The notes beneath the pieces were generated by a model. The model worked only from the letters and a program-made list of their open reading frames with translations. It made no database searches and was not told the DNA's origin. Below are positions 2,776-55,751 of a stretch of 64,000 nucleotides of DNA, piece after piece (position 1 is the first letter of the stretch; the number at the start of each line of letters is the position of its first letter). Position numbers and translations under genes: made by a program. The stretch lies in IMG/VR virus record IMGVR_UViG_3300027736_001324, positions 124,001-188,000 of that record. One strand, given 5' to 3'.

Positions 2776-3237
2776 ATGTCAAATTGGTATACAAGAGTAT
2801 CAGTGAATTTAGGTGTAATCCCTGATTTCATTCAGCACTTTGAATCTGAGTTAGAACAAGCAAAACGTGAAGTAAAGGTATACGGCAATGTTGAAAAGAA
2901 CATTGCTGCTATTCCTGGTGTCACCGAACATAGATTCAATCAATTACAAGAAGTAGAAGCGGTACTTAACTTGCTCAATATTAGATTAAAGAAGATTCGC
3001 CGAACTCATTTTCAAAAATATTTAGAAGCGTATAATAGAGCATTGACAAGCCGTGATGCTGAAAAGTATGCTGAAGGCGAAGATGAAGTAATTGATATGG
3101 AAGTATTGATTAATGAAGTCGCTTATCTTAGAAATCGTTGGCTTGGTATAATGAAGGGCTTAGAGGCCAAACAGTGGCAGATGGGTCATATCGTGCGGTT
3201 ACGCACAAGTGGAATGGAAGATATTACAATTGGCTAA
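2776..3237 (+). CDS. uvsY: recombination mediator UvsY-like protein
   Basis: helical 153-aa protein with KYxEGExEV and KGLEAKQWQM, resembling UvsY; position after uvsX. Confidence 0.7.
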   Translation: MSNWYTRVSVNLGVIPDFIQHFESELEQAKREVKVYGNVEKNIAAIPGVTEHRFNQLQEVEAVLNLLNIRLKKIRRTHFQKYLEAYNRALTSRDAEKYAEGEDEVIDMEVLINEVAYLRNRWLGIMKGLEAKQWQMGHIVRLRTSGMEDITIG

Positions 3238-4087
3238 TTCAAATATATTAAATCAAATCGCAGCAAGAAACCTTAAATCATCTGGTGTTATTGCCGGTGC
3301 TAACGGTAATCACCATACAATCACAATGGGTAACATTCAACCATTAACTTCACTTACACTTAGTGGATTGAATGGTACAAGTAATGATTGGGATATATTT
3401 GGTAATAAAAATGTTAAGAAATATGAGGTGTTTGAAACCACTGAGGATATTTTAGCATTGAGTGTTACTTGGCATAGGTTGCGTCCATTAATAAGTCATG
3501 GTATTAGTAACATAATAAATCCTAGTAACAGACCAACTAAACTTACTGATGAAGTTTTATTCAAAGAAATAATTCAGGAAGATAGAGATAAGGCTAATGT
3601 TATCCGTGACTATTACAGTAAGAAACTTATGATGTTTACCTTAAAAGGTCAACAACTAACTAGTTATAGAAAAGATTTGAACACATTCATCCATGGTGAT
3701 TGTAAAGTAGTTAAAGAAGAAATGATGCCATTGGTGTATCGTTTACCTGAATTCTATGAGTATGATGTTGGGCTAGATGAAATGTTTTTAGAATTAGATA
3801 CTAGATTTGAAGGATCACAAATTGCGTCATCTACAATAAAAACACTTAATCCAGTAAAGAAATTTACAGTAAAACGCAAAAGTAGAAGATTTGTAGAGTA
3901 TTGGTTGAAGGACGAAGAAAATAAACCTTACAAAATTGAAATTGATTCAAATAATGAATTGATGCACTTGTGGGATTACTTTTATGATAGGGGCAAGTTT
4001 CACGAAATAACACTTGATACTGTAATTAGATTTAGCAATAGGGATAGTATTTCCCATTATAAATTGATTAAGTGGAAATTAGCATAA
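3230..4087 (+). CDS. hypothetical protein (start probably TTG 3230; ORF track gives 3209)
   Basis: long ORF followed by a terminator. Confidence 0.7.
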   Translation: MANSNILNQIAARNLKSSGVIAGANGNHHTITMGNIQPLTSLTLSGLNGTSNDWDIFGNKNVKKYEVFETTEDILALSVTWHRLRPLISHGISNIINPSNRPTKLTDEVLFKEIIQEDRDKANVIRDYYSKKLMMFTLKGQQLTSYRKDLNTFIHGDCKVVKEEMMPLVYRLPEFYEYDVGLDEMFLELDTRFEGSQIASSTIKTLNPVKKFTVKRKSRRFVEYWLKDEENKPYKIEIDSNNELMHLWDYFYDRGKFHEITLDTVIRFSNRDSISHYKLIKWKLA

Positions 4088-4088
4088 T

Positions 4089-4113
4089 AAAACCCCCGGA
4101 ATCGGGGGTTTTT
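4089..4113 (+). terminator. rho-independent terminator
   Basis: AAAACCCCCG-GAAT-CGGGGGTTTTT. Confidence 0.85.
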
Positions 4114-4139
4114 GCTTATGGCCATAGATAAAATTTTGG

Positions 4140-4168
4140 TTGACATTAAATGGTTTTGGGTCTATAAT
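4140..4168 (+). promoter_or_regulatory. early sigma70 promoter cassette P1
   Basis: TTGACA-ttaaatggttttgggtc-TATAAT (17-bp spacer). Confidence 0.9.
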
Positions 4169-4198
4169 AGAGGCTTAGATTGATTAAAGGAGCTAGTT

Positions 4199-4471
4199 AT
4201 GACACAAGTTTACGACCGTTTGACAGACAAAGAAAAGCGTGAAGTTCGTATGTATGGCGTGACCGTAGCAGGTATGCGTGAGTCTGTGGAATCTAGCATC
4301 ACTTTCAAACTGTCCGGTCCTGCTATGATGATTGCTAGCCTCATGAGTGACGCCCAAGAAATGGTCAATACCGAGTACGGTGATGTTGACTATATGCGGG
4401 CTGAAGATGCCCGTCAATGTCTGAATCGTGCTAAGTGGATTTTGTTTGAATATGTAATGAAAAGAGATTGA
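4199..4471 (+). CDS. early hypothetical protein
   Basis: AAGGAG RBS; own promoter. Confidence 0.8.
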   Translation: MTQVYDRLTDKEKREVRMYGVTVAGMRESVESSITFKLSGPAMMIASLMSDAQEMVNTEYGDVDYMRAEDARQCLNRAKWILFEYVMKRD

Positions 4472-4496
4472 CATTAAATGGTTTTGGGTATATAAT
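4468..4496 (+). promoter_or_regulatory. early promoter cassette P2
   Basis: TTGACA-ttaaatggttttgggta-TATAAT; upstream gene's TGA stop lies in the -35 box. Confidence 0.9.
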
Positions 4497-4528
4497 AGAG
4501 ACTTAAACAGTTAATCAACGGAGCAAAT

Positions 4529-4903
4529 ATGTCTGAATTCACTACTTGGGAACAAATGTCTGACTTGGAGCAGGCCCAATGTCAATATTGGGATATGTAC
4601 AAGGACGCTTACGGTGTTCGTCCCCGCGGTGTTGACACCTCTACGTGGACCCTTGCGGACTTTGATGCTGAGTTCCAGTTGCTCGGTGAAATCATCAAGC
4701 AAGAGGACATTGCACGTAAAGCGGCCGAAACTGAGGCTATCGATAGGTTTGAACAGCATGTAACCAACACTATTTGCATGGGTGCCCGTGATCGGGAAAC
4801 AGCATTGCGCTGGATCATGGATGCTAGCAATGCTAACGGTGACTGGGAATATTTGTGTTATGATCTGGGCCTGCCCTATCATTATTTTCGTAAGGTTGCG
4901 TAA
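4529..4903 (+). CDS. early hypothetical protein
   Basis: GGAG RBS; own promoter; YWDMYKDAYGVRPR motif of the kind seen in small early phage proteins. Confidence 0.8.
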   Translation: MSEFTTWEQMSDLEQAQCQYWDMYKDAYGVRPRGVDTSTWTLADFDAEFQLLGEIIKQEDIARKAAETEAIDRFEQHVTNTICMGARDRETALRWIMDASNANGDWEYLCYDLGLPYHYFRKVA

Positions 4904-4912
4904 TCTCAAAAC

Positions 4913-4941
4913 TTGACATTAAATGGATTTGGGTATAAAAT
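4913..4941 (+). promoter_or_regulatory. early promoter cassette P3
   Basis: TTGACA-ttaaatggatttgggta-TAAAAT. Confidence 0.85.
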
Positions 4942-4968
4942 GAACACTTATTCAGTTGAAAGGTGTTT

Positions 4969-5223
4969 ATGAAATTCAATTCTGTTGCATTGTCTGTACT
5001 GTATTTCAAAGTGTCTGTCAAAAAGAAGCCCTATAGCAATGAAGAAATTTGTTTGCTAATTGCTGCTAGTGATCACACTAAGCGAAACGCAAAAGATAAA
5101 GTAATGCTAGGCAAAACATTATACTTTAGAGAATTGCCGCTCTCTACTGAGCAATCTGTAATTGATTCTCATATTGAAAACATTACAAAATTGAACAACT
5201 TTTCAGTTGCCCAAGTGTTGTAA
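4969..5223 (+). CDS. early hypothetical protein
   Basis: ATG 4969 after AAAGGTG; own promoter. Confidence 0.7.
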   Translation: MKFNSVALSVLYFKVSVKKKPYSNEEICLLIAASDHTKRNAKDKVMLGKTLYFRELPLSTEQSVIDSHIENITKLNNFSVAQVL

Positions 5224-5242
5224 AAATACAACATACCCAAAG

Positions 5243-5271
5243 TTGACAATAATTGGCTTTGGGTATATAAT
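5243..5271 (+). promoter_or_regulatory. early promoter cassette P4 with flanking inverted repeats
   Basis: TTGACA-ataattggctttgggta-TATAAT. Confidence 0.88.
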
Positions 5272-5305
5272 ACAATCTTAGACAGTTAATTAAAGGACTT
5301 AGAAA

Positions 5306-5572
5306 ATGGCTAAAAAAATCTCTATCAAAGTGTTCGGTGACCCGGGTCATGCATGGGCCCGCTTCCCCAAAGCAAAGTTGGTCAGTCTTGGTATCGCAGA
5401 TAAAATCTCTACATACAGCTACCAAAATGGTACCAATGCTTTTTTGGAAGAAGATTGTGATTTGTCAGTACTAGTGGTCGCTTTGCGTGACCGTGGATAT
5501 GAGATCAAATTCAACGAAAGCCACGCTAATAAGCAGAGCAAAATCCGCGGATACGCTACATATAGGGCTTGA
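5306..5572 (+). CDS. early hypothetical protein
   Basis: DPGHAW and FLEEDCD motifs; AAGGA RBS. Confidence 0.8.
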   Translation: MAKKISIKVFGDPGHAWARFPKAKLVSLGIADKISTYSYQNGTNAFLEEDCDLSVLVVALRDRGYEIKFNESHANKQSKIRGYATYRA

Positions 5573-5597
5573 CATTAAATGGTTTTGGGTATATAAT
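5569..5597 (+). promoter_or_regulatory. early promoter cassette P5
   Basis: TTGACA-ttaaatggttttgggta-TATAAT, identical to P2; upstream TGA stop lies in the -35 box. Confidence 0.9.
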
Positions 5598-5630
5598 AGA
5601 GTCTTATTCAGTCAACAACAGGAGTTTTAT

Positions 5631-5849
5631 ATGGGCTACAAAGTTATCGCAGACAAACATCAGATGGATGAAATGCGTACCAAGTACGGTCCGCGTAAGG
5701 GGCTAGAAGGTCCTTTCAACTTCTCCGGACGTGTCCTGTATTACGATACTAAAGAAGGCATGTACTATGACCCGACTACGGACTTTTATGTTGAGCGGGA
5801 TGAAATGGATATCATCCATCAGCGTATTGTTAACATTTTGAAGGCATAA
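5631..5849 (+). CDS. early hypothetical protein (true start 5631)
   Basis: AGGAG RBS; GLEGPF...GRVLYYD..EG.YYDP.TD motif. Confidence 0.8.
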   Translation: MGYKVIADKHQMDEMRTKYGPRKGLEGPFNFSGRVLYYDTKEGMYYDPTTDFYVERDEMDIIHQRIVNILKA

Positions 5850-5850
5850 T

Positions 5851-6018
5851 ATGTTTTGGACTATCGTTCTAATCGGTGCAGGATTGTCATCTACCAGTGT
5901 CATGTATGTGGGCCAGTTTGAACAACAGGAAACTTGTGCTAAAGTAGCACAGGAATTTAAGCAGCAAAATATGAAAGCCGCCTGCGTACAAATGACTGGC
6001 GTTCCGGTTAAAAAATAA
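5851..6018 (+). CDS. small 55-aa protein with hydrophobic N-terminus (not in ORF track)
   Basis: MFWTIVLIGAGLSSTSVMYVGQFEQQETCAKVAQEFKQQNMKAACVQMTGVPVKK; fills the gap between stop 5849 and promoter P6. Confidence 0.7.
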   Translation: MFWTIVLIGAGLSSTSVMYVGQFEQQETCAKVAQEFKQQNMKAACVQMTGVPVKK

Positions 6019-6019
6019 T

Positions 6020-6048
6020 TTGACATTAAATGGATTTTCGTGTATCAT
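6020..6048 (+). promoter_or_regulatory. early promoter cassette P6
   Basis: TTGACA-ttaaatggattttcgtg-TATCAT. Confidence 0.8.
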
Positions 6049-6081
6049 AACGGCTTATTCACTTAATTAAAGGAATCAAAA

Positions 6082-6264
6082 ATGATTACTACTCTTGCAC
6101 AATTCATCCAGCAATGTGAAGTGTCCACAAACTATGAGATTTACAAATTGTTTGAATTCAAAACTTCCGAAGAAGTTCGGAACGATGTTTATATGTGGGC
6201 CGATCCTAAGAGCCCGGAACCATTTCGTAGTGCTATGTACAATCTAGGGTTCACCGACTATTGA
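6082..6264 (+). CDS. early hypothetical protein
   Basis: AAGGA RBS; own promoter. Confidence 0.75.
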   Translation: MITTLAQFIQQCEVSTNYEIYKLFEFKTSEEVRNDVYMWADPKSPEPFRSAMYNLGFTDY

Positions 6265-6289
6265 CAATAAATGGGTTTTAGTATATAAT
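6261..6289 (+). promoter_or_regulatory. early promoter cassette P7
   Basis: TTGACA-ataaatgggttttagta-TATAAT; upstream TGA stop lies in the -35 box. Confidence 0.88.
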
Positions 6290-6323
6290 ATAGTCTTAAT
6301 CAGTTAACTAAAGGAATTTATCT

Positions 6324-7358
6324 ATGTCAACAATTCGCATTTTCTCTGGTTCTTATCGTAATAACCCTGTTGCTAATGAAGTGTTTACACTAGTTAAGGG
6401 TTATCAAGTTGGTAAGAAGGGTGGATTTGTTACTGTTAAAAATGACGGACAGTTTGCAATGGGTGGACCTCAGGTCCGTGTCAATGTAGAAAGCATTGAG
6501 GATATTGAATTTTTGAATGGAGAGACAGTGGCAGATAATACAGTAGAGTTTAAAGTCAAGGCAGAAGTGTCCAAAGAAACTGAAGTAGAGGCAATGGACC
6601 GCATTGCACTACGTTTCGGCATTCTTGATGAAATGGCAAGTGCTTGTATCAGCGGTGACATTCGTGCTATGATTGTGTCAGGTCCTCCCGGAGTTGGTAA
6701 GTCACATGGCGTTGAAAAGCAAATGGAAAAGTCAAGCATGTTTGACAAGATTGCCGGCAAGCGTGTTCGTTTCAATGTTGTTAAAGGTGCTATGACTGCA
6801 CTAGGTTTGTACACACAGTTGTACAAATATTCTGACACAAAAAATGTGTTGATTTTTGATGACTGCGACAGTGTGTTTGCTGATGAATTGGCTTTGAACA
6901 TTCTGAAAGCAGCATTGGATAGTGGCAAGACTCGCAAGATTTGCTGGAATAGTGACAGTCGTTTGCTACGTGAAGAAGGTATCCCGAATCAATTCAACTT
7001 TAATGGTAGTGCTATCTTTATCACTAACTTGAAGTTTGAAAACGTGAAAAGCAAGAAATTGCAAGATCACTTGGAAGCACTACAAAGTCGTTGTCACTTT
7101 CTGGACCTCACTATTAATAGTGAGCGTGACAAAATGTTGCGTATCAAGCAGGTCCATCGTGATGCTGATGGTGGGTTGTTTGTTGATTACAACTTTGAAG
7201 AAACCCAATCTACTGAAATTCTAGATTTCATGTGGGAAAATCACGGCAAACTGCGTGAAATGAGTTTGCGTATGTGTTTGAAAATTGCCGATCTAGTTAA
7301 GATCAGCCCAGCAAACTGGAAAAATCTTGCACGTACTACTTGCATGAAGAATGCTTAA
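6324..7358 (+). CDS. P-loop/AAA+ ATPase
   Basis: Walker A GPPGVGKS, Walker B LIFDDCD, FITN sensor, ALQSR arginine finger. Confidence 0.85.
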   Translation: MSTIRIFSGSYRNNPVANEVFTLVKGYQVGKKGGFVTVKNDGQFAMGGPQVRVNVESIEDIEFLNGETVADNTVEFKVKAEVSKETEVEAMDRIALRFGILDEMASACISGDIRAMIVSGPPGVGKSHGVEKQMEKSSMFDKIAGKRVRFNVVKGAMTALGLYTQLYKYSDTKNVLIFDDCDSVFADELALNILKAALDSGKTRKICWNSDSRLLREEGIPNQFNFNGSAIFITNLKFENVKSKKLQDHLEALQSRCHFLDLTINSERDKMLRIKQVHRDADGGLFVDYNFEETQSTEILDFMWENHGKLREMSLRMCLKIADLVKISPANWKNLARTTCMKNA

Positions 7359-7376
7359 TTAAAATATAAGTTTTAT

Positions 7377-7402
7377 AGGGGAACAATTGTTCCCCTTTTT
7401 TT
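7377..7402 (+). terminator. rho-independent terminator
   Basis: AGGGGAACAATTGTTCCCCT palindrome followed by a T run. Confidence 0.85.
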
Positions 7403-7453
7403 GCCTTTATGTTTGCAATTGCTAATTAGTTTATGTTATACTAAGTACTAATT

Positions 7454-8941
7454 ATGAAACAATGTAAAATAATCGTCAGGGATGAAGTCAATGTAAAGAT
7501 TGAAGGTCTAGAATTGACTGAACGTAAATCCCTAGTAAAAATGTTTGAGTACGAAGTGCCCGGTGCAAGGTATCTTCCCGCGGTCCGTCTAGGTAGATGG
7601 AATGGTAAGGTTAGTTTCTTTAGTCTCGGTGGCAGTAGTTATGTCAATCTACTACCCGAAATACTACCCTTCATAGACAGCCGAGACTATGATATTGAAC
7701 TAGAGGACCTTCGTACATATAGTACAACATTCAATTTTGTTGAAGTGTCCGAGGATACGTTCAAACACAAGAATTGGCCCGAAGGTCATCCAATTGCAGG
7801 ACAACCAGTTGTATTGCGTGACTATCAAATATCAATCATTAATGAGTTTTTAAAGAATCCACAATCACTACAAGAAATTGCTACGGGAGCAGGTAAGACA
7901 TTAATCACAGCAGCATTGAGTTGGTCTATTGAAAGTTACGGACGCAGTATTGTTATCGTCCCAAACAAAAGTCTTGTAACACAAACCGAAGCAGATTACA
8001 TTAATCTAGGATTAGATGTTGGTGTGTACTTTGGTGATAGAAAAGAATACAATAAGACGCATACAATCTGTACATGGCAAAGCCTTAACAATATGCTTAA
8101 GAAAACAAAAGCAGGTGAAGCAGAAGTTGAGATTGGTGACTTCTTAGAAGGTGTAGTTTGTGTCATGGTAGATGAGGTTCACATGGCCAAAGCCGACGCA
8201 CTAAAAGAATTGCTTACTGGCGTAATGAGTAACATCCCAATTCGTTGGGGATTGACTGGAACTATACCTAAAGAAAAATTCGCAAGTCAAGCCATCTTTA
8301 TTAGTCTTGGCAATGTTATCAACAAATTATCTGCTAGCGAATTACAAGATAGAGGGGTATTGGCACAATGTCATGTAAACATTGTACAACTACAAGATGG
8401 TGTTGAGTTTAGTAATTACCAATCTGAACTAAAACATTTACTTGAAGATGATAAACGATTAAATAAAATTACTCAATTGGTCGATGTGATTAAGAATAGT
8501 GGCAACACATTGATATTAGTTGATAGAGTAGCAGCAGGTAAAGAACTACATAATAGGTTAGCCGAACTACTACGTAATTTTAAAACAGAATATGATGTTG
8601 TATTTGTATCAGGTAATACCGGTATGGATGAACGCAAAGAACAATATGATGAGGTTGCTACAGCAACTAACAAAATCATTATCGCTACATATGGTGTAGC
8701 AGCAGTTGGTATTAACATTCCCCGAATCTTTAATCTTGTTCTTATTGAACCGGGTAAGAGTTTTGTTCGGGTAATACAAAGTATCGGTCGTGGTATTCGT
8801 AAAGCTGAAGATAAGAACTTTGTTCAGATTTGGGATATCACAAGTAATTGTAAGTTTGCAAAACGGCATCTTACACAAAGAAAAGCATTTTATAAAGAAG
8901 CAAACTATCCATTTGATGTTGAAAAACTTACATATAAATGA
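7454..8941 (+). CDS. uvsW: UvsW-like SF2 DNA helicase
   Basis: LRDYQ, ATGAGKT, DEVH, GLTGT and QSIGRGIR motifs. Confidence 0.9.
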   Translation: MKQCKIIVRDEVNVKIEGLELTERKSLVKMFEYEVPGARYLPAVRLGRWNGKVSFFSLGGSSYVNLLPEILPFIDSRDYDIELEDLRTYSTTFNFVEVSEDTFKHKNWPEGHPIAGQPVVLRDYQISIINEFLKNPQSLQEIATGAGKTLITAALSWSIESYGRSIVIVPNKSLVTQTEADYINLGLDVGVYFGDRKEYNKTHTICTWQSLNNMLKKTKAGEAEVEIGDFLEGVVCVMVDEVHMAKADALKELLTGVMSNIPIRWGLTGTIPKEKFASQAIFISLGNVINKLSASELQDRGVLAQCHVNIVQLQDGVEFSNYQSELKHLLEDDKRLNKITQLVDVIKNSGNTLILVDRVAAGKELHNRLAELLRNFKTEYDVVFVSGNTGMDERKEQYDEVATATNKIIIATYGVAAVGINIPRIFNLVLIEPGKSFVRVIQSIGRGIRKAEDKNFVQIWDITSNCKFAKRHLTQRKAFYKEANYPFDVEKLTYK

Positions 8942-8947
8942 TACAAT
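8919..8947 (+). promoter_or_regulatory. sigma70-type promoter heading the 8954-14608 operon
   Basis: TTGAAA-17 bp-TACAAT, with TG just upstream of -10; ATG 6 nt downstream. Confidence 0.55.
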
Positions 8948-8953
8948 AACACT

Positions 8954-9454
8954 ATGAGAATTTTGACCCTAGATAACGAATACTATAACTTAGAGACATT
9001 GCCAGAGGAGATAGATGATTTACGATTTGCAATATTGGACAACAGTAATCCAAGCAATGTAGATTATCATTATATACCATTAATCTTTTTAGAAAGTTTT
9101 AATGCCCCGGCACTTGTATTGAAGATTGGTAAACACACAATTAAAATGCCAGTGGATTGGCAAATATTGATTGGTGAAAAAGAGCATGGCGATTTAGAAA
9201 CATTGCCACTAACAAGTATCAATGATAGAGGATTTAATGCGTTTGAGTTTAATCCGTTAACTAGTTTTAGTCCTACCTTTCTACCTATTGAGATTGTAGA
9301 TATATACCACGATGTAACATGGTATGCTCCCCGATTAAAGAACGGGCAGTTTCTGTGTGTACCGTTGAATGATGGGCCTAAACCCGAATGTGTATATTTT
9401 GTAAAAGAAATTAGTCGTAACTGTGAGATAATAGATTATAGTCAGGCATTCTAA
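8954..9454 (+). CDS. hypothetical beta-rich protein, possibly a degenerate stand-alone Hint-like fold
   Basis: 166-aa ORF; pattern VLKIGKHTIKMPVDWQILIG ... IEIVDIYHDVTWYAPRLKNGQFLCV. Confidence 0.6.
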   Translation: MRILTLDNEYYNLETLPEEIDDLRFAILDNSNPSNVDYHYIPLIFLESFNAPALVLKIGKHTIKMPVDWQILIGEKEHGDLETLPLTSINDRGFNAFEFNPLTSFSPTFLPIEIVDIYHDVTWYAPRLKNGQFLCVPLNDGPKPECVYFVKEISRNCEIIDYSQAF

Positions 9455-13138: not shown

Positions 13139-13686
13139 TGGCAAATGATATAATGATTGATTTGGAGACACTTGACACAAGTCCATATTGTGTTATATTA
13201 ACTATAGGAGCTGTGCGGTTTGATCCTAAGGGTAATGGTGTAGTAGAACGATTAGAATTGCGTCCTACGATTGAAGAACAGACAGAAAAATATGATAGGA
13301 TAATTGATGACAGTACAATTGAATGGTGGGCAAAACAAAGCCCTGCCGCACTTGAAGAAGCGATGGGAGATGAAGGACGTGTTTCATTTAGTGAATGTAT
13401 GGAAACCCTTTATAAGTTTTGTTGGAATCGCCGTGCTGTGTGGTCTAATGGGGCTGCATTTGATATCGTTGCTTGCGAGACCGCATGGAGGCAACTTGGA
13501 GTGCGAATACCGTGGCCATTCTATACCGTACGAGATACTAGAACGTTGTATGAAGTTGCAGGAGTCAAACTAAGTGATGGCGGACATTCTACTAGTCACA
13601 AAGCAGTAGAAGATGCCGAAAGACAAGCAATTGTTGTACAAAAAGCGTATACTAAACTAATTAAAGCAGGAGTAATGGCACCATGA
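13138..13686 (+). CDS. DEDDh 3'-5' exonuclease (Rv2179c/DexA-like)
   Basis: IMIDLETL, WSNGAAFD, RDTRT and HKAVEDA motifs; TAATG coupling. Confidence 0.85.
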   Translation: MANDIMIDLETLDTSPYCVILTIGAVRFDPKGNGVVERLELRPTIEEQTEKYDRIIDDSTIEWWAKQSPAALEEAMGDEGRVSFSECMETLYKFCWNRRAVWSNGAAFDIVACETAWRQLGVRIPWPFYTVRDTRTLYEVAGVKLSDGGHSTSHKAVEDAERQAIVVQKAYTKLIKAGVMAP

Positions 13687-14000
13687 TGGTATATATTGTA
13701 GCATATAAATTTGAAACGGAAAAAGAATATGATGACTATATGCAGAATGAAGATGATTTTAAGTTGATGACTTGGTTAGTTGATAACAACATAACTGTCA
13801 TTGATGCTGAAGATTGTACTGATTTAGTAGATAATAAAGAGGTAATAGAGTTTAGTTTTAAATTTAAAAAAGACGCAAAAAAGTTTGCAAAGGCGTTTGA
13901 TTTAAAAGTAGAAGGGCCTTCCGAACGTGATTTCACTAACCCGTGGTTACCCCCCGATTGGAACGGTGACTGGGATAATCTACCGGGGTTCAGAGGATGA
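13683..14000 (+). CDS. hypothetical protein, likely a divergent 11th member of the FxLRW family
   Basis: LMTWLVDN helix and FSFKFKKDAKKFAKAF; ATGA overlaps at both ends. Confidence 0.65.
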   Translation: MMVYIVAYKFETEKEYDDYMQNEDDFKLMTWLVDNNITVIDAEDCTDLVDNKEVIEFSFKFKKDAKKFAKAFDLKVEGPSERDFTNPWLPPDWNGDWDNLPGFRG

Positions 14001-28936: not shown

Positions 28937-28962
28937 AAAAAGAGACTTAGGTCTCTTTTTTT
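28935..28962. terminator. bidirectional terminator between convergent genes
   Basis: A7-GAGAC-TTAG-GTCTC-T7. Confidence 0.85.
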
Positions 28963-29363
28963 GTAAGTGTCTTTAACTTGTCCTGGACAACATCAAAATT
29001 CACAGTACTAAACAATCCAGGATGTAATGGCTTGGGATATTGATTATCTCCTACCCATGCATATCCACAATGTTCTTCATTAAGTGCAGGAACAAACTCA
29101 TCTTCTACCTCACAAAAGAATGTATGATAGGTAAAGGTGTGATTGATGAATTTCTGTATAGGTATTAATTTAGCATTAATTGGAAACATTCCAATTTCTT
29201 CCTGACATTCTCTAGCAATACCCTCAAACAGAGTTTCATCATCTTCTATCTTGCCGCCGGGAATACCCCAATTGCCAGGGTTTTTGTTGTCTGTGCGTAA
29301 TAGATATAGGTAGCGATTTGTTTTACTACTATAAAAGAAAACTCCGGCTGATGTATTGCTCAT
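28947..29363 (-). CDS. Nudix hydrolase (start probably 29363)
   Basis: Nudix box GKIEDDETLFEGIARECQEEIG. Confidence 0.9.
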   Translation of the reverse strand: MSNTSAGVFFYSSKTNRYLYLLRTDNKNPGNWGIPGGKIEDDETLFEGIARECQEEIGMFPINAKLIPIQKFINHTFTYHTFFCEVEDEFVPALNEEHCGYAWVGDNQYPKPLHPGLFSTVNFDVVQDKLKTLTKKET

Positions 29364-29382
29364 ACTATGATTTATCACAGTA

Positions 29383-30759
29383 TTAGATGACGATAGAATA
29401 ATCCCCTTGATCATACCATCCTTCGTATGATTTCATCCAAGTATCATCTACAAAACGATATTGGACATTAGTTGTTAAGTTAGTTACATATTCTAATGTA
29501 GTTGGGGTTGCAATAGTGCTATCAAAACTTACAAACCATTCTCCAGCGCCGGCATTGTATTCAATAATGTCATTAGCAAATGCTACTACATTACCCCATG
29601 CAACAGTGCTATCACCGGGAGCACCAATGTTATCTACTAGAAGATATCTACGTCCATTAACTGGCCCGGGCAATCCTGCATTTGGACCAGTTAATTGAGG
29701 GTTTATCACACCGTCAACTGGATCCAATGTATTTTGTGGTAATGTATCAGGGTCAATGTTATAGATTAATAATCTATCATCATTGGGATTAGGTACAATA
29801 GTGCCTACAATTTCGTGATCCATAAATGGATTTTGTAGCCAAATTTGACTAATACCTGGTTTAACTGTTCCATACACATTTAACACACTAGACCAATATA
29901 TATCAGTATTGGGATTATCAGGTAATTCTGTATTAAAATTACTTGGATCAAACGCAACTGCTTGTGGCAATATTTGTAATGTATTTCCCAATAGCAATAA
30001 TTTGTATCCGTATGGTGTGATTTTTGGTCTAGTTCCTAACAGCAAATCATCATCTTGTATATCAGTTAATGCTGTGCCTTTAAAGATTGATGCAATAATT
30101 TTTTCAATAACACCCATCTTCTTAAGTTTACTTGCTGTACTAATCCAAATTGGCATATAGAATTTCCAACTCATAACATCAATTGGATTACCGGTGCCTA
30201 CTGGAATACTGCGACTACTGAAAGTTAATCCATCTTGGTATACAACACTTAATGAGGTCCAATCAATAAAGTTATCAGTACTTTGTATCTCTAATGCAGG
30301 GTTAAACAATGTGCCTAATTGTTCTATTAATTGCAGTTTTTGATTATAGTTTGTAGTCCAAAAATCTACAGTAAGTCTTAATGTATAAGGCACTGGCATT
30401 AATCTTTCTACCGTGAATGCCTGTCCTTGCACAGTTTCATATTCTTGTGTGTCGTTATTATAAGATCGTTGTCGAACTTGCACCTTATCAATAAATGTAG
30501 GATCTTGTGTTCTGCGTTGATCGTATTCCAATGCAGTAATATAATATGTTATTAGAGGTGCGCTTGGTAAGTTACTGGCACTATTATTAGCAATAATAGT
30601 TGATGCCTGTCTGCTGCTATCACCATACATAACAGGAACACGAACTAATATTTCATTACCCGCTGGATCTTTGCCTTTAGTAACTTGCCAGTTACTGAAA
30701 ATTTTTGCAAATTGAATTAAAAATCTGCGTACCTGATTGTCATAGAAAAAATCTGCCAT
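29383..30759 (-). CDS. tail terminator/sheath stabiliser (gp15-like) with C-terminal extension
   Basis: FFYDNQVRRFLIQFAKIFSN, VPVMYG, MPVPY and QLIEQL...FNP motifs. Confidence 0.8.
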   Translation of the reverse strand: MADFFYDNQVRRFLIQFAKIFSNWQVTKGKDPAGNEILVRVPVMYGDSSRQASTIIANNSASNLPSAPLITYYITALEYDQRRTQDPTFIDKVQVRQRSYNNDTQEYETVQGQAFTVERLMPVPYTLRLTVDFWTTNYNQKLQLIEQLGTLFNPALEIQSTDNFIDWTSLSVVYQDGLTFSSRSIPVGTGNPIDVMSWKFYMPIWISTASKLKKMGVIEKIIASIFKGTALTDIQDDDLLLGTRPKITPYGYKLLLLGNTLQILPQAVAFDPSNFNTELPDNPNTDIYWSSVLNVYGTVKPGISQIWLQNPFMDHEIVGTIVPNPNDDRLLIYNIDPDTLPQNTLDPVDGVINPQLTGPNAGLPGPVNGRRYLLVDNIGAPGDSTVAWGNVVAFANDIIEYNAGAGEWFVSFDSTIATPTTLEYVTNLTTNVQYRFVDDTWMKSYEGWYDQGDYSIVI

Positions 30760-30769
30760 TATATACTCT

Positions 30770-32473
30770 TTATACTACTGGGGGCAACGGGTCAGGTGTC
30801 AATCCTAAAATAGTTGACAACGCTTGACGTTGCGGAACAAATGTTCCATCTGTAAGTTTTGTTTGCGCCCTATCATTAATAAAGCTAGATTTCTGTGATT
30901 TATCTGCTTCCGTCATGCCTGTAGGCGTTCTGACATTTTTAGATATTCTAACCCATATTCTACCATCCCAGCGATATAGCAATTGCGGGAAGTAATCAAT
31001 ACGTAAAAAGTAATCTCCAACTTGTGGATTTTGTGGGAAACTTATACCAGCTCCAGTTGGGAATCCATTTGGTGCTTCTCCGGTGCCATCTAAATATCCT
31101 GTCGTATATCCAAAACTTCTTGGGCTACTACGTGCAATGAATTGGAATGCCGGATCACAATCTGCTCTCCAATCCATATCCTGATTAATTGTACCAGTAA
31201 ATCCCGGTAGTTCTGGGTTAGCATCAGCAGTTGCATATGTATTATCAGCAGTACCGTATGGTCCGGTAATTTGTCCCATTGAATATACTGTTAATATTTT
31301 GTTCCCTGTTACCTGCCCTGAATTAGTATCTGTTCTTTCAGGTGCTAAGGTAACTGTTTCTAAATTGACAGTGTTGAAAATATCTAACTTATCATATCCC
31401 ATATCAGCCGTCATGTCCCAAATACTTTTTATTGCTGCTTTAGAAATTTTAAGTACTGGGCTAGGATTTTTAAAATTAGAGTTACGAACCATCATTACTC
31501 TAACATTTATAACTGGATTACTACCATTTGTATTAACCCCAACCGGTGGTGCAGGATTATTAATGGCTCGGGATAAAACTCCATCACTTGAATATTCACC
31601 GTACGTGGGTACAATATATAGATTACTTCTATCGTAACCTGCCTTAGGTACAAGACGTTCTGCTTCAACAAGGGCAGCATTGTTAATTTCAATGTTCTTA
31701 TTGTAAGTAGCAAGAATATCTTTAAGATTATCCGCGGTATCTAATTGCCAATATGTAGGATCAGGTGGGTATGTCCCGGCCGGAACATCAATTAATGCCT
31801 TGTAATTTTTATCACCGTAAGTAATTACATATCCTGCAGGATATGTTTTATTTTTGTCCCATATACCTAAATAAGTATCTTGGTCTATTGGAGCACTTAA
31901 TATCTGACTAAATTCTTCACTATCAACCAATGGTTCACATTTGATACGCCATAGATGCGGGAACCAAGTTGGACTAAACCCCTCGCTAGCATAATTAGCG
32001 TCGGTAATTTGCATGAAACGTTTCAATGCAGTTGGGATAGTTTCCTTTAAGGGGTTGTAATCTAGTAAATGAGGTAATTCAATTACATCACCAACCATTA
32101 ACTTTCTACCAATCAAATCAATCATATCATTATAATGAACTGTAATGAATATAATATCATTGTTTAAGAATAATCCAAACTGACTTAAATCAAAATCTAA
32201 ATTCTGTACATTGTAATGTCCACGTAAACGATATACATTTGGGTCATATGTTCTGTCACGGTTTTCCAAGAATAACAAATCTTGTATATTAGTCGGGGCT
32301 AATACATCATATTCAGGTTGGGTAGCATCAATTGATGGACCTTGGTTTGTTGGACCCATATACTTATGTACATACAAATCCGTGGAACCTGCGGTGAACT
32401 GTTCTGATATTATCTTATCAAAAAAGTTATAATCATTAGTTTTATTGGGACGCCAAAGTGAAAGCCGGGGCAT
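30770..32473 (-). CDS. neck/head-closure protein (gp14-like) with inserted carbohydrate-binding module
   Basis: DLLFLENRDRTYD, LSQFGL and GDVIELPH; insert WDKNKTYPAGYVITYGDKNYKAL; late box at 32494-32501 on minus strand. Confidence 0.72.
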   Translation of the reverse strand: MPRLSLWRPNKTNDYNFFDKIISEQFTAGSTDLYVHKYMGPTNQGPSIDATQPEYDVLAPTNIQDLLFLENRDRTYDPNVYRLRGHYNVQNLDFDLSQFGLFLNNDIIFITVHYNDMIDLIGRKLMVGDVIELPHLLDYNPLKETIPTALKRFMQITDANYASEGFSPTWFPHLWRIKCEPLVDSEEFSQILSAPIDQDTYLGIWDKNKTYPAGYVITYGDKNYKALIDVPAGTYPPDPTYWQLDTADNLKDILATYNKNIEINNAALVEAERLVPKAGYDRSNLYIVPTYGEYSSDGVLSRAINNPAPPVGVNTNGSNPVINVRVMMVRNSNFKNPSPVLKISKAAIKSIWDMTADMGYDKLDIFNTVNLETVTLAPERTDTNSGQVTGNKILTVYSMGQITGPYGTADNTYATADANPELPGFTGTINQDMDWRADCDPAFQFIARSSPRSFGYTTGYLDGTGEAPNGFPTGAGISFPQNPQVGDYFLRIDYFPQLLYRWDGRIWVRISKNVRTPTGMTEADKSQKSSFINDRAQTKLTDGTFVPQRQALSTILGLTPDPLPPVV

Positions 32474-32533: not shown

Positions 32534-32562
32534 TTGACATTAAATGGTTATTGTGTTATACT
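32534..32562 (+). promoter_or_regulatory. early promoter cassette P8 (remote copy)
   Basis: TTGACA-ttaaatggttattgtgt-TATACT; shares the TTAAATGG spacer with P1-P7. Confidence 0.85.
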
Positions 32563-32592
32563 ACGTATTCAATTGAAACTTTGGAGTAATAT

Positions 32593-33759
32593 ATGGCTAC
32601 ACGTAAGCATACAGACGATCATTTTGTAAAAGCACTCAACCCCAGAGATGCTGATACAAAGTATATGGGTGAAGAACCATTCTTCCCGACCCAGCCCGAA
32701 CCCGAAACAAGATTTTCAGCACTTGCTAGAAGTTTTACGTGGTACACCCGTTTCTATACTAAAAAAGACGCAAAAGAACTATTGTGTCAATATCTGGATT
32801 ACAATAAGCGAACAGACGAGGCTAAGTTGGTTCGTAAGGTCCATGAAAGCGAATTCATTATTACATTGTGCTGGGTAGCACGTATGACAATGCGCGGGCT
32901 AGAATTAACCGAGCATGAAGAACTGACATTGCAAAATGATATTGGACGACTAGTCAAATCATTGAATTCTACAGAAACAAAAACTAGCGCAACCAGTATC
33001 GTAAAAGAAGAAGTGGTTGCAACACGCCCCAACATTCAGGAAATTCTGAAAGAAAAGGCACGAGATGCCGCCGGCGAAATGGAAGGGATGATTGACGATT
33101 TTGTTACTAAGGGCAAAGCGTTGGAAAAGACAGTTGATATTGTTGCAAAATACAATGTCATGCCTCAACATATCCCAATCATTGTTGAAATCTGGAAACG
33201 TAAGCAAGATGAATTTCAACGTCTAAGTGACGGTGACGAGTCTCTAAAAGAGGGTTATGCGTTCCTAGGCAAGATTCAGATTCGTAACATTCTGAAATTT
33301 ATTGAGGGTGTGCTAGGTGACTTGAATAGCTATATCAGCATTAAGAAAGCAAGCAAGGCTCCGCGCAAACGTAAAGCAGTCCCTGTTGAAAAGATTGTTG
33401 CTAAACTGAAATACTTGAAGTTGTTCAAGGATGTTCAATCTAAACTTGATTTAGTTAGTGTACATCCTACAAAACTTCACGGGGCAAGTGAAGCGTGGGT
33501 TTATGATACTGGTAAGCGTAAATTACATCACTACATTGCTGACGATTATAGCAAAGTGTTCAGTGTTAAGGGTAACACATTGCTAGGGTTTGATGCGAAT
33601 ACTAGTGAGATGAAAACATTACGTAAGCCCGGCGAGCAAATCAAAGAAGTGATGGGAAGCAAGCCCGCAGCACGTAAGTATTTCAAAGATATCAAAGCAG
33701 TAGGTGCAGTGCCCAATGGAAGGTTCAACGAAAATATGTTGATTTTGAAAGCGTTTTAA
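32593..33759 (+). CDS. early conserved hypothetical phage protein
   Basis: 388 aa, GGAG RBS; C-terminal SVKGNTLLGFD..SEMKTLRKP...NGRFNENMLILKAF. Confidence 0.8.
   Translation: MATRKHTDDHFVKALNPRDADTKYMGEEPFFPTQPEPETRFSALARSFTWYTRFYTKKDAKELLCQYLDYNKRTDEAKLVRKVHESEFIITLCWVARMTMRGLELTEHEELTLQNDIGRLVKSLNSTETKTSATSIVKEEVVATRPNIQEILKEKARDAAGEMEGMIDDFVTKGKALEKTVDIVAKYNVMPQHIPIIVEIWKRKQDEFQRLSDGDESLKEGYAFLGKIQIRNILKFIEGVLGDLNSYISIKKASKAPRKRKAVPVEKIVAKLKYLKLFKDVQSKLDLVSVHPTKLHGASEAWVYDTGKRKLHHYIADDYSKVFSVKGNTLLGFDANTSEMKTLRKPGEQIKEVMGSKPAARKYFKDIKAVGAVPNGRFNENMLILKAF

Positions 33760-47360: not shown

Positions 47361-55751
<8,391 letters not shown>

What the first reader, a model, noticed from the sequence alone, without database searches (positions are those of the whole stretch)
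4140..6323. Seven near-identical early promoter cassettes, three with the upstream stop codon inside the -35 box
Seen: TTGACA-(T/A)TAA(A/T)TGG-N9-TA(T/A)(A/C)AT at 4140, 4468, 4913, 5243, 5569, 6020 and 6261, each followed by a similar leader (CTTA..CAGTT...AAGGA) and one or two small genes. P2 and P5 are identical over more than 30 bp. At P2, P5 and P7 the preceding gene ends on the TGA of tTGAca. Spacer conservation exceeds what sigma70 requires. Established: repeated early-promoter cassettes mediate modular shuffling in some T4-type phages (PeSL elements). Inference: promoter-delimited mobile gene modules, with the TTAAATGG spacer possibly being a phage regulator site.
Basis: partly seen in the sequence, partly recalled or inferred. 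Interest (0 to 1): 0.6.

Follow-up and report, generated by a model that had tools for sequence, protein, structure and literature searches.

The report
Promoter cassettes that shuffle phage genes
A freshwater giant phage carries a row of near-identical 60-base promoter-plus-leader cassettes, each in front of one small gene. Related phages show that single genes are added, lost, swapped and moved exactly at these cassettes, as already described for T4-like phages.

Summary
Seven cassettes (perfect or near-perfect TTGACA-N17-TATAAT, a conserved spacer and a conserved leader ending in a ribosome site) lie at 4140-6323. All are on the + strand. The pattern is expected 0.01 times by chance. An eighth, diverged copy is at 32534, and the 264-kb phage record holds 16.

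The stop codons of three real genes are the TGA inside TTGACA.

The spacer carries more information (22 bits) than the two hexamers (19 bits). The same genome has about 15 other consensus promoters with unrelated spacers.

In close relatives from independent lake metagenomes the block is not syntenic. Whole promoter+gene units are present, absent, replaced or relocated, and single cassettes are chimeras of two window cassettes with different crossover points. One module gene has at least 23 different upstream and 19 downstream neighbours, while the ATPase-helicase pair next door stays together in 69 of 70 loci.

This is PeSL-type modular shuffling by homologous recombination, here in an uncultured PA5oct/Atu_ph07-like jumbo phage clade. 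Most cassettes lack the stem-loop that defines PeSLs.

Promoter activity, early timing and any regulator binding the spacer remain untested. I rate it a new variant of a known kind, of moderate interest.

The parts
4089..4114 (+). Intrinsic terminator (G+C hairpin plus T run) ending the upstream 292-aa gene. It marks the left border of the array.
   Evidence: Sequence read. The hairpin was folded (first cassette context, z -2.6).
4140..4198 (+). Cassette P1: -35, conserved spacer, -10, leader and ribosome site.
   Evidence: 12/12 hexamers.
4199..4471 (+). Module gene A (90 aa, no known family). Its stop is the TGA inside the -35 of P2.
   Evidence: Third-position bias of substitutions.
4468..4528 (+). 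Cassette P2.
   Evidence: Identical to P5 over 33 nt.
4529..4903 (+). Module gene B (124 aa, phrog_21968, unknown function).
4913..4968 (+). Cassette P3 (-10 is TAAAAT).
4969..5223 (+). Module gene E (84 aa). Absent from relatives L020, L021, L029, L039 and L044.
5233..5266 (+). Stem-loop enclosing the -35 of P4. A 10-nt arm upstream pairs with the G-rich part of the spacer. It is the only PeSL-like stem-loop inside the array.
   Evidence: z -4.3. Related junctions show arms that change together.
5243..5305 (+). Cassette P4.
5306..5572 (+). Module gene F (88 aa). Its stop is the TGA inside the -35 of P5. It is found in at least 23 upstream and 19 downstream gene contexts.
5569..5630 (+). Cassette P5.
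5631..6018 (+). Two-gene module: H (72 aa, phrog_13298, 5631-5849) and I (55 aa, hydrophobic N-terminus, 5851-6018). Relatives carry extra genes between or after them.
   Evidence: coding signal for I is unclear.
6020..6081 (+). Cassette P6 (variant spacer, -10 is TATCAT).
6082..6264 (+). Module gene J (60 aa). Its stop is the TGA inside the -35 of P7. Absent from L027, L033, L035, L036 and L044.
6261..6323 (+). Cassette P7, in front of the conserved ATPase.
6324..7358 (+). Conserved ATPase (344 aa, phrog_1250). It is the right-hand anchor and the last gene before the next terminator.
7377..7403 (+). Intrinsic terminator after the ATPase. It marks the right border of the transcription block.
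32534..32592 (+). Eighth, diverged cassette (-10 is TATACT, different leader) before the 388-aa gene 32593-33759.

Best explanation
The block 4140-6323 is a hyperplastic accessory-gene region of an uncultured freshwater jumbo phage. Each small gene, or gene pair, carries its own roughly 60-bp cassette: a consensus sigma-70-type promoter, a conserved spacer, and a short unstructured leader with a ribosome site.

**Role in expression (inferred).** The host RNA polymerase holoenzyme starts at every cassette soon after infection. There is no terminator between 4114 and 7377, so the seven transcripts are nested and all end after the ATPase gene. Downstream genes therefore receive the summed output.

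**Role in evolution (shown by comparison).** The cassettes are portable stretches of homology. Recombination between any two of them deletes, inserts, replaces or relocates one promoter+gene unit and leaves a working chimeric cassette behind. The phage's own UvsX/gp32-type machinery, encoded 2-4 kb upstream, is the presumed agent. Where the stop codon lies in the -35 box, the next cassette also supplies the stop.

Frequent exchange also homogenises the copies within a lineage. That explains part of the excess conservation of spacer and leader.
For: **The motif is real and oriented.**
- The record holds 16 copies, all on the + strand, in five clusters.
- In 880 kb of related loci there are 199 distinct near-consensus sites on the gene strand and 1 on the other strand.

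**Module content differs among close relatives.**
- The window reads A|B|E|F|HI|J. L020 lacks E, L027 and L044 lack J, L029 and L044 have an extra module P, L039 has R and Z in place of E and F, and L038 has other modules in place of A and B.
- The same architectures recur in contigs from different metagenomes: window = L017 = L018, L029 = L030, L039 = L040.
- Independent unitigs span B-P3-E-P4, terminator-P1-A and H-I-P6-J with no differences (table 8).

**Chimeric junctions.**
- The single cassette between I and the ATPase in L033 and L044 has the odd core and early leader of window P6, joined to the late leader of P7.
- In L027 the join lies at the 5' edge of the cassette instead. That makes two J deletions with different crossover points.

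**Breakpoints.** 264 of 436 homology ends lie inside cassettes against 53 expected.

**Relocation.**
- L038 carries, between the anchor gene and E, modules 89% and 86% identical to G000 108035-108418 and 262112-262663.
- In a 171-kb relative, F lies about 135 kb from the ATPase.

**Context diversity.**
- F (82-100% amino-acid identity) has at least 23 upstream and 19 downstream neighbour families, with cassettes on both sides in 63/78 and 66/76 loci. Af has at least 28 and 26 families.
- Control: the helicase follows the ATPase in 69 of 70 loci, while the ATPase has 13 different upstream neighbour families.

**Linkage decays inside the cassette.** Variable core positions are almost unlinked to either flank, and leader positions are only partly linked to the downstream gene.

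**Concerted evolution.** Sites on one contig are more alike than sites on different contigs (0.55 against 0.46; 0 of 300 permutations reached this). Distant clades have their own spacer and leader variants.

**Recombination genes and relatives.**
- A gp32-like SSB lies at 162-1166 and a UvsX-like recombinase at 1466-2533.
- The closest cultured relative, PA5oct, depends on host RNA polymerase and has TTGAC/TATAATA promoters at its mapped transcript starts.

**Precedent.** PeSL-mediated shuffling in T4-like phages is documented.
Against: - No transcript data exist for this phage. All 24 runs found are DNA and held only as contigs. Promoter activity, start sites and early timing are therefore inferred from sequence.
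- All relatives are metagenome assemblies, which can mis-join at repeats.
- The L038 relocation rests on one 6.3-kb contig.
- Breakpoint counts use non-independent pairs of related sequences, so the enrichment is real but its p-value is not meaningful.
- Several gene differences are not bounded by cassettes: S, L, T, M, V and X, and a clean one-gene gap at 13687-13997. Cassette recombination is not the only route of change.
- Homogenisation alone does not explain why nTAAAT next to the -35 stays conserved in clades where the rest of the spacer has drifted.
Confidence: 0.78

Rival explanations
1. The excess conservation of spacer and leader is functional. A phage-encoded factor recognises TTGACAnTAAATGG or the leader RNA and switches this promoter class on or off. 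The factor could be a repressor for early shut-off, a modifier of RNA polymerase, or a leader-binding or leader-cutting protein. Recombination would then be a by-product. This can be true alongside the main explanation.
For: - The genome has about 15 other near-consensus promoters, four of them 12/12, whose spacers are unrelated. The spacer therefore marks a class and is not a general need.
- nTAAAT after the -35 is kept in relatives whose ATPase is only 70-74% identical and whose remaining spacer has drifted.
- With hexamer-only ascertainment, many spacer positions still carry more than 1.2 bits, whereas a large share of the third codon positions of the neighbouring genes differ among the same relatives.
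Against: - The 14-mer never occurs apart from a full cassette, so there are no stand-alone operator-like sites.
- No candidate regulator was identified.
- Leaders show no conserved fold; their z scores are mostly positive.
- Lineage-specific variants shared by all copies fit homogenisation equally well.
Confidence: 0.3
2. The apparent shuffling is an assembly artefact. Short-read assemblers join co-occurring strains wrongly at the 60-bp repeats, and the real genomes are collinear.
For: - The cassettes are repeats at which de Bruijn contigs break. Depth peaks in the bins that hold cassettes.
- Most cassette-to-cassette joints in the laid contigs have only about 30 nt on the short side.
Against: - Identical variant architectures were assembled independently from different metagenomes.
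- Modules such as P, Q, R, Z and Ab are new sequence absent from the window region, not re-ordered window sequence.
- A 60-bp repeat is shorter than a typical read.
- Flanking core genes stay collinear in the same contigs.
- Chimeric cassettes carry clade-typical variants on both sides.
Confidence: 0.06
3. The cassettes are recognition sites of a dedicated site-specific system, such as an integron-like recombinase or a nuclease that starts repair-driven copying. Exchange would not be by general homologous recombination.
For: - The PeSL authors left site-specific recombination open.
- The cassette is highly conserved, strictly oriented and confined to this phage clade. It is in at least 118 viral contig stretches and in none of 185,579 bacterial and archaeal species genomes.
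Against: - Crossover points differ between events: at the 5' edge in L027 and within the leader in L033 and L044.
- Linkage decays gradually across the cassette.
- No integrase or homing nuclease was seen in or beside the array. The two larger inserted genes in relatives are a cell-wall hydrolase and an FG-GAP protein.
- The phage has its own UvsX and SSB.
Confidence: 0.07
4. The cassettes are only tandemly duplicated strong promoters kept alike by selection for maximal strength, with no part in genome rearrangement.
For: The hexamers and 17-nt spacing are the optimum for sigma-70-type holoenzymes.
Against: - Other consensus promoters in the genome have free spacers.
- Breakpoints, chimeras and context diversity all map to the cassettes.
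Confidence: 0.04

Closest known systems
PeSL (promoter-early stem-loop) cassettes of T4-like phages RB49/phi1, PST/T4 and nt-1/KVP40 (Arbiol et al. 2010, PMC2839356; Comeau et al. 2014, PMC4122927)
   Same: - Near-perfect sigma-70 promoter with the ribosome site and start codon at its 3' end.
- Repeated in one orientation in hyperplastic regions in front of small genes of unknown function.
- Differences between close relatives are bounded by the elements.
- A deletion leaves one chimeric element.
- The phage has T4-type recombination genes.
   Different: - Six of the seven window cassettes have no stem-loop and no conserved AT-rich upstream part. The upstream gene runs up to or into the -35 box.
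- The conserved unit is about 60 bp rather than about 100 bp, and it begins sharply at the -35.
- Spacer and leader are conserved more strongly than the hexamers.
- The host phage is a PA5oct/Atu_ph07-like jumbo phage from lakes, not a classified T4-like phage.
- Mini-circles were not demonstrated.
T4 early promoters (recalled from the T4 literature, not tested here)
   Same: Phage early promoters that carry much more sequence information than host promoters, including conserved spacer positions. They are used by unmodified or phage-modified host polymerase.
   Different: The consensus differs (my recollection of the T4 -35 region is GTTTAC, with an A-rich upstream part). No Alt, Mod, AsiA or MotA homologues were searched for here.
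Morons of lambdoid phages (gene with its own promoter and terminator inserted between core genes)
   Same: Self-expressed accessory genes added as single units between conserved genes.
   Different: Morons do not share a common repeated cassette. They usually carry their own terminator and are not exchanged through mutual homology.
Integron gene cassettes
   Same: Arrays of single-gene units that are gained, lost and re-ordered at a repeated boundary element.
   Different: Integron cassettes lack promoters, need an integrase and recombine at a fixed point in attC. Here every unit has its own promoter, no integrase is seen and crossover points vary.
Stoperators of mycobacteriophage L5 (recalled from memory)
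   Same: Short oriented repeats that contain a -35-like TTGACA, lie at gene ends and can overlap stop codons.
   Different: Stoperators are stand-alone repressor sites without a -10. Here the motif never occurs without the full promoter.

Membership tests
PeSL cassette | Sigma-70 consensus promoter | tested here: met
   Five of seven sites are 12/12 and two are 11/12, all with a 17-nt spacer. This is sequence only; activity was not measured.
PeSL cassette | Stem-loop that can act as terminator or attenuator, within or next to the promoter | tested here: not met
   - Only P4 has one (5233-5266, z -4.3). P1 is preceded by a separate true terminator. P2, P3, P5, P6 and P7 have none.
- Of 333 distinct cassettes, 6% have a complementary run of 8 bp or more, against 0.3% after shuffling. 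The arms of these change together.
PeSL cassette | [quoted passage not shown] | tested here: not met
   The 40 nt upstream carry only about 7.6 bits in total. Upstream genes end 0-20 nt before the -35 or inside it.
PeSL cassette | Ribosome site and start codon of the downstream gene at the 3' end | tested here: met
   An AAGGA/GGAG motif and an ATG lie 56-63 nt after the -35 start in all seven.
PeSL cassette | Clustered in hyperplastic regions in front of genes without known homologues | tested here: met
   - The 16 copies lie in five clusters.
- The module genes have no Pfam family, and only two fall in PHROGs of unknown function.
- The neighbouring core genes are collinear.
PeSL cassette | Insertions, deletions and replacements between close relatives bounded by the elements, leaving chimeric elements | tested here: met
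PeSL cassette | Circular excision products (mini-circles) | tested here: inconclusive
   Contigs show 'goes back' joints between cassettes, such as 6315 to 5569. The sides are about 30-35 nt, and only assembled contigs were available, not reads.
PeSL cassette | Host genome is a T4-like phage | tested here: inconclusive
   gp32-like SSB, UvsX, DnaB-type helicase, primase and a T4-type sheath are present. The best cultured matches are Atu_ph07, Phosso and PA5oct at about 45-50%.
Integron-like cassette array | Integrase plus a fixed crossover point in the boundary repeat | tested here: not met
   Crossovers lie at different places. No integrase was seen among the genes of the array or the inserted genes of relatives. 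The whole genome was not screened.
Operator or stoperator-type regulator sites | Copies of the motif that stand alone, without a promoter | tested here: not met
   All 16 forward matches of the 14-mer are full cassettes. There is one reverse near-match with one mismatch.

The most novel reading that the evidence does not exclude
The extra 40 bits or so in spacer and leader are kept because a phage factor reads them. That would make the cassette the address tag of a dedicated, clade-wide gene-exchange and expression system. In such a 'promoter integron', any gene carrying the tag is both switched on at the right time and freely exchangeable among co-infecting jumbo phages across lakes worldwide.
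Probability: 0.15. Interest if true: 0.75.

Novelty: new variant of a known kind. Interest (0 to 1): 0.5.

Why it matters
Promoter-mediated modular shuffling has so far rested on three pairs of cultured T4-like phages.

Here the same process is visible at population scale, in hundreds of contigs from dozens of lake metagenomes. It occurs in a different, uncultured jumbo-phage clade and with a stripped-down cassette that has no terminator part.

This suggests that the promoter and leader alone are enough as the exchange handle. The process would then be a general way for large lytic phages to trade small accessory genes, which are likely host-takeover or counter-defence functions.

The cassettes also give a practical handle. 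They mark the accessory genes and offer ready-made strong promoters. They also supply a conserved primer site for capturing the pool of exchangeable genes from environmental DNA.

Tried and rejected
- **Megablast to cultured phages.** Megablast of 3000-9000 against 50,697 phage records found nothing. Sensitive blastn found only helicase fragments at 66-72%. No cultured close relative was available for synteny.
- **Reads.** Only assembled contigs were on offer. Many cassette-to-cassette joints appeared: 4188 to 4520, 4497 to 5243, 4934 to 5569, 6056 to 6299, and 6315 back to 5569. The short sides of 26-35 nt are the repeat itself, so I do not count these joints as evidence for deletions or circles.
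- **Leader RNA structure.** None was found. z scores are mostly positive, meaning less structure than shuffled sequence.
- **Stand-alone regulator sites.** None exist.
- **Host clue from bacterial genomes.** The cassette core is absent from all species representatives.
- **Homing endonucleases as drivers of the larger insertions in relatives.** Rejected. The two genes are a SleB-type cell-wall hydrolase and an FG-GAP repeat protein.
- **Function of module genes.** There is no Pfam family. The PHROG and Atlas hits are viral hypothetical proteins only.
- **Extended -10 (TGn) as the reason for the G-rich spacer end.** Rejected. The bases before the -10 are G, T, A.
- **Stop codon in the -35 as a special signal.** Three of six is near the one-in-three chance for abutting ORFs.
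- **tRNA genes.** None in the window.
Full report
**Where the window lies.** The window is bases 124001-188000 of a 263,709-base linear IMG/VR virus record, judged 69% complete. GC is about 37% and almost all genes are on the + strand. Just upstream of the finding lie a gp32-like single-strand DNA-binding protein (162-1166) and a UvsX-like recombinase (1466-2533). Downstream lie an ATPase, helicases, a primase and tail genes. The sheath and the ATPase match Agrobacterium phage Atu_ph07, Sinorhizobium phage Phosso and Pseudomonas phage PA5oct best, at about 45-50%. No cultured phage is close at the DNA level. The sequencing runs that hold the stretch are freshwater and lake metagenomes. This is an uncultured freshwater jumbo phage with T4-type replication and recombination genes.

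**The observation.** Chance expectation is 0.01. A diverged eighth copy is at 32534. The whole record has 16 copies, all forward, in five clusters. Each copy begins sharply at the first T of TTGACA. It runs through a 17-nt spacer, TATAAT plus A, and a leader with CTTAnnCAGTTAA and an AAGGA or GGAG ribosome site, to an ATG about 60 nt later.

Information content over the 16 copies is 18.6 bits for the hexamers, 22.3 for the spacer and 21 for the first 25 nt downstream. The 40 nt upstream carry only about 7.6 bits, near noise level. P2 and P5 are identical for 33 nt.

Genes A, F and J end on the TGA inside TTGACA. Their homologues differ mainly at third codon positions, so they are real genes. 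The other three upstream genes end 2-20 nt before the -35. Three of six in-frame stops is what dense packing alone would give.

**Transcription layout (inferred).** A strong hairpin terminator lies just before P1 (about 4089-4114). The next one lies after the ATPase gene (7377-7403). None lies between them. If the cassettes fire, the seven transcripts are nested and co-terminal. The leaders show no conserved fold and are less structured than shuffled sequence, as expected for open translation starts. PA5oct, the closest cultured relative, depends on host RNA polymerase and has TTGAC/TATAATA motifs at its mapped transcript starts.

**Two classes of promoter.** The record has about 15 further sites within one mismatch of the consensus hexamers, four of them perfect, and their spacers are unrelated. 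In all, 31 such sites lie on the + strand and 3 on the - strand. The conserved spacer and leader are therefore not a general requirement of the host polymerase. The 14-mer made of the -35 plus the first part of the spacer never occurs without the rest of the cassette.

**Relatives: the block is not syntenic.** A scan of IMG/VR with the ATPase gave 80 loci at 69-100% identity. In those at 84-98%, the cassettes upstream of the ATPase differ in number and spacing. Naming each promoter-to-promoter segment by its gene gives these orders:
- window: A|B|E|F|HI|J
- L020: A|B|F|H..I..|J
- L027: A|B|E|F|HI, then the ATPase directly
- L029: A|P|B|HI..|orphan cassette|Q|J
- L039: A|B|H|R|Z|J
- L044: A|P|B|F|Ab|HI
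- L036: Ab|H

The differences are whole promoter+gene units. The same variant orders were assembled from different metagenomes: window = L017 = L018, L029 = L030, L039 = L040. Unitigs from independent runs span B-P3-E-P4, terminator-P1-A and H-I-P6-J without a difference (table 8).

**Junctions are chimeric cassettes.** Window P6, which follows gene I, has an unusual spacer end, a TATCAT -10 and a CACTTA leader. In L033 and L044, which lack J, the single cassette between I and the ATPase has exactly this P6-type core and early leader, joined to the P7-type late leader and the ATPase start. In L027, which also lacks J, the cassette is P7-type throughout and the join is at its 5' edge. These are the products expected from P6 x P7 crossovers at two different points. 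Likewise, the F leader is constant whatever lies upstream, while the core in front of it follows the upstream gene E when E is present.

Over nine relatives, 264 of 436 ends of homologous segments fall within the cassettes against 53 expected. The pairs are not independent, so only the enrichment counts, not a p-value.

Across 357 cassette instances, variable core positions are almost unlinked to either flank. Leader positions are only partly linked to the downstream gene. This fits crossovers spread over the whole cassette. It argues against a fixed site-specific cut.

**Relocation and context diversity.** In L038 the place of A and B is taken by modules 89% and 86% identical to the record's clusters at 108 kb and 262 kb. 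This rests on one 6.3-kb contig. In a 171-kb relative, gene F lies about 135 kb from the ATPase, where the window has it 1 kb away.

Scans with two module genes gave 80 loci each. F stays 82-100% identical yet has at least 23 upstream and 19 downstream neighbour families, with a cassette before it in 63 of 78 loci and after it in 66 of 76. Af has at least 28 and 26 neighbour families.

As a control, the helicase follows the ATPase in 69 of 70 loci, while the ATPase has 13 different upstream neighbour families. Core genes on both sides are collinear at 86-95%.

**Spread.** It is in none of the 185,579 bacterial and archaeal species genomes.

**Why spacer and leader are so conserved.** Part of the answer is concerted evolution. 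Near-consensus sites on one contig are more alike than sites on different contigs (0.55 against 0.46; 0 of 300 permutations reached this). Distant clades have their own shared variants. For example, ATAAATC replaces TTAAATGG, and other leaders begin ACTTGTATTGATT or ACATGTATCAATT.

Part of it may be function. nTAAAT next to the -35 persists even where the rest of the spacer has drifted. I could not test it.

**Stem-loops.** PeSLs are defined as promoter plus stem-loop. In the window only P4 has one: a 10-nt arm upstream pairs with the G-rich spacer end and encloses the -35 (5233-5266, z -4.3). Among 333 distinct cassettes, about 6% have such a run of 8 bp or more, against 0.3% after shuffling. 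The two arms change together in different junction types, so these stems are real. Most cassettes lack them because the upstream gene occupies that space.

**Comparison with known systems.** The mechanism and setting match PeSL-mediated modular shuffling. Membership fails on the stem-loop and the AT-rich upstream part, and the phage clade is different. Integron-like and stoperator-like readings fail their defining tests. I file this as a new variant of a known kind.

**Limits.**
- No RNA data exist and only contig-level read data were available.
- All relatives are metagenome assemblies.
- Functions of the module genes are unknown.
- Cassette-independent gene differences also exist.

Noticed in passing
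window 32534-32592: A diverged eighth cassette (same -35 and first spacer half, TATACT -10, different leader) lies before a 388-aa gene of unknown function (phrog_11903). It sits at the divergent junction with minus-strand virion genes 28947-32473.
   Followed up: partly
window 54, 13172, 22552, 39931, 41400, 58088: Further + strand sites lie within one mismatch of TTGACA-N16/17-TATAAT but have unrelated spacers. They form a second class of consensus promoters in the same phage.
   Followed up: partly
window 13683-14000: This 105-aa ORF is missing as a clean gap of about 311 bp from relatives L019, L020, L029 and L044. It is a one-gene difference with no cassette at its borders.
   Followed up: no
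window 47361-55751: A 2796-aa ORF has GC of about 0.49-0.51 against about 0.37 in the rest of the window.
   Followed up: no
L020:5898-6578 and L020:6737-8251: Some relatives carry a SleB-type cell-wall hydrolase and a 504-aa FG-GAP repeat protein inside the H-I module, without a cassette of their own.
   Followed up: partly
window 5306-5572: Module gene F has 35-49% identical homologues in unrelated cultured phages (Limnohabitans phage DC31, Pelagibacter phage HTVC204P, an Erythrobacter phage). It looks like a widely traded small gene.
   Followed up: partly
L012:1501-1760 (G000 261857-262116, outside the window): One cassette has a different leader with a short hairpin. A frame read by eye suggests a small hydrophobic protein whose stop would again be the TGA of the next TTGACA, but I found no start codon for that frame, and the ATG-started ORF called here (58 aa) ends earlier.
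   Followed up: no
L045-L096 (loci of distant relatives): In 35 of 70 loci the helicase match begins about 1.1 kb after the ATPase instead of about 100 nt. This is either an inserted gene or a diverged helicase N-terminus.
   Followed up: no
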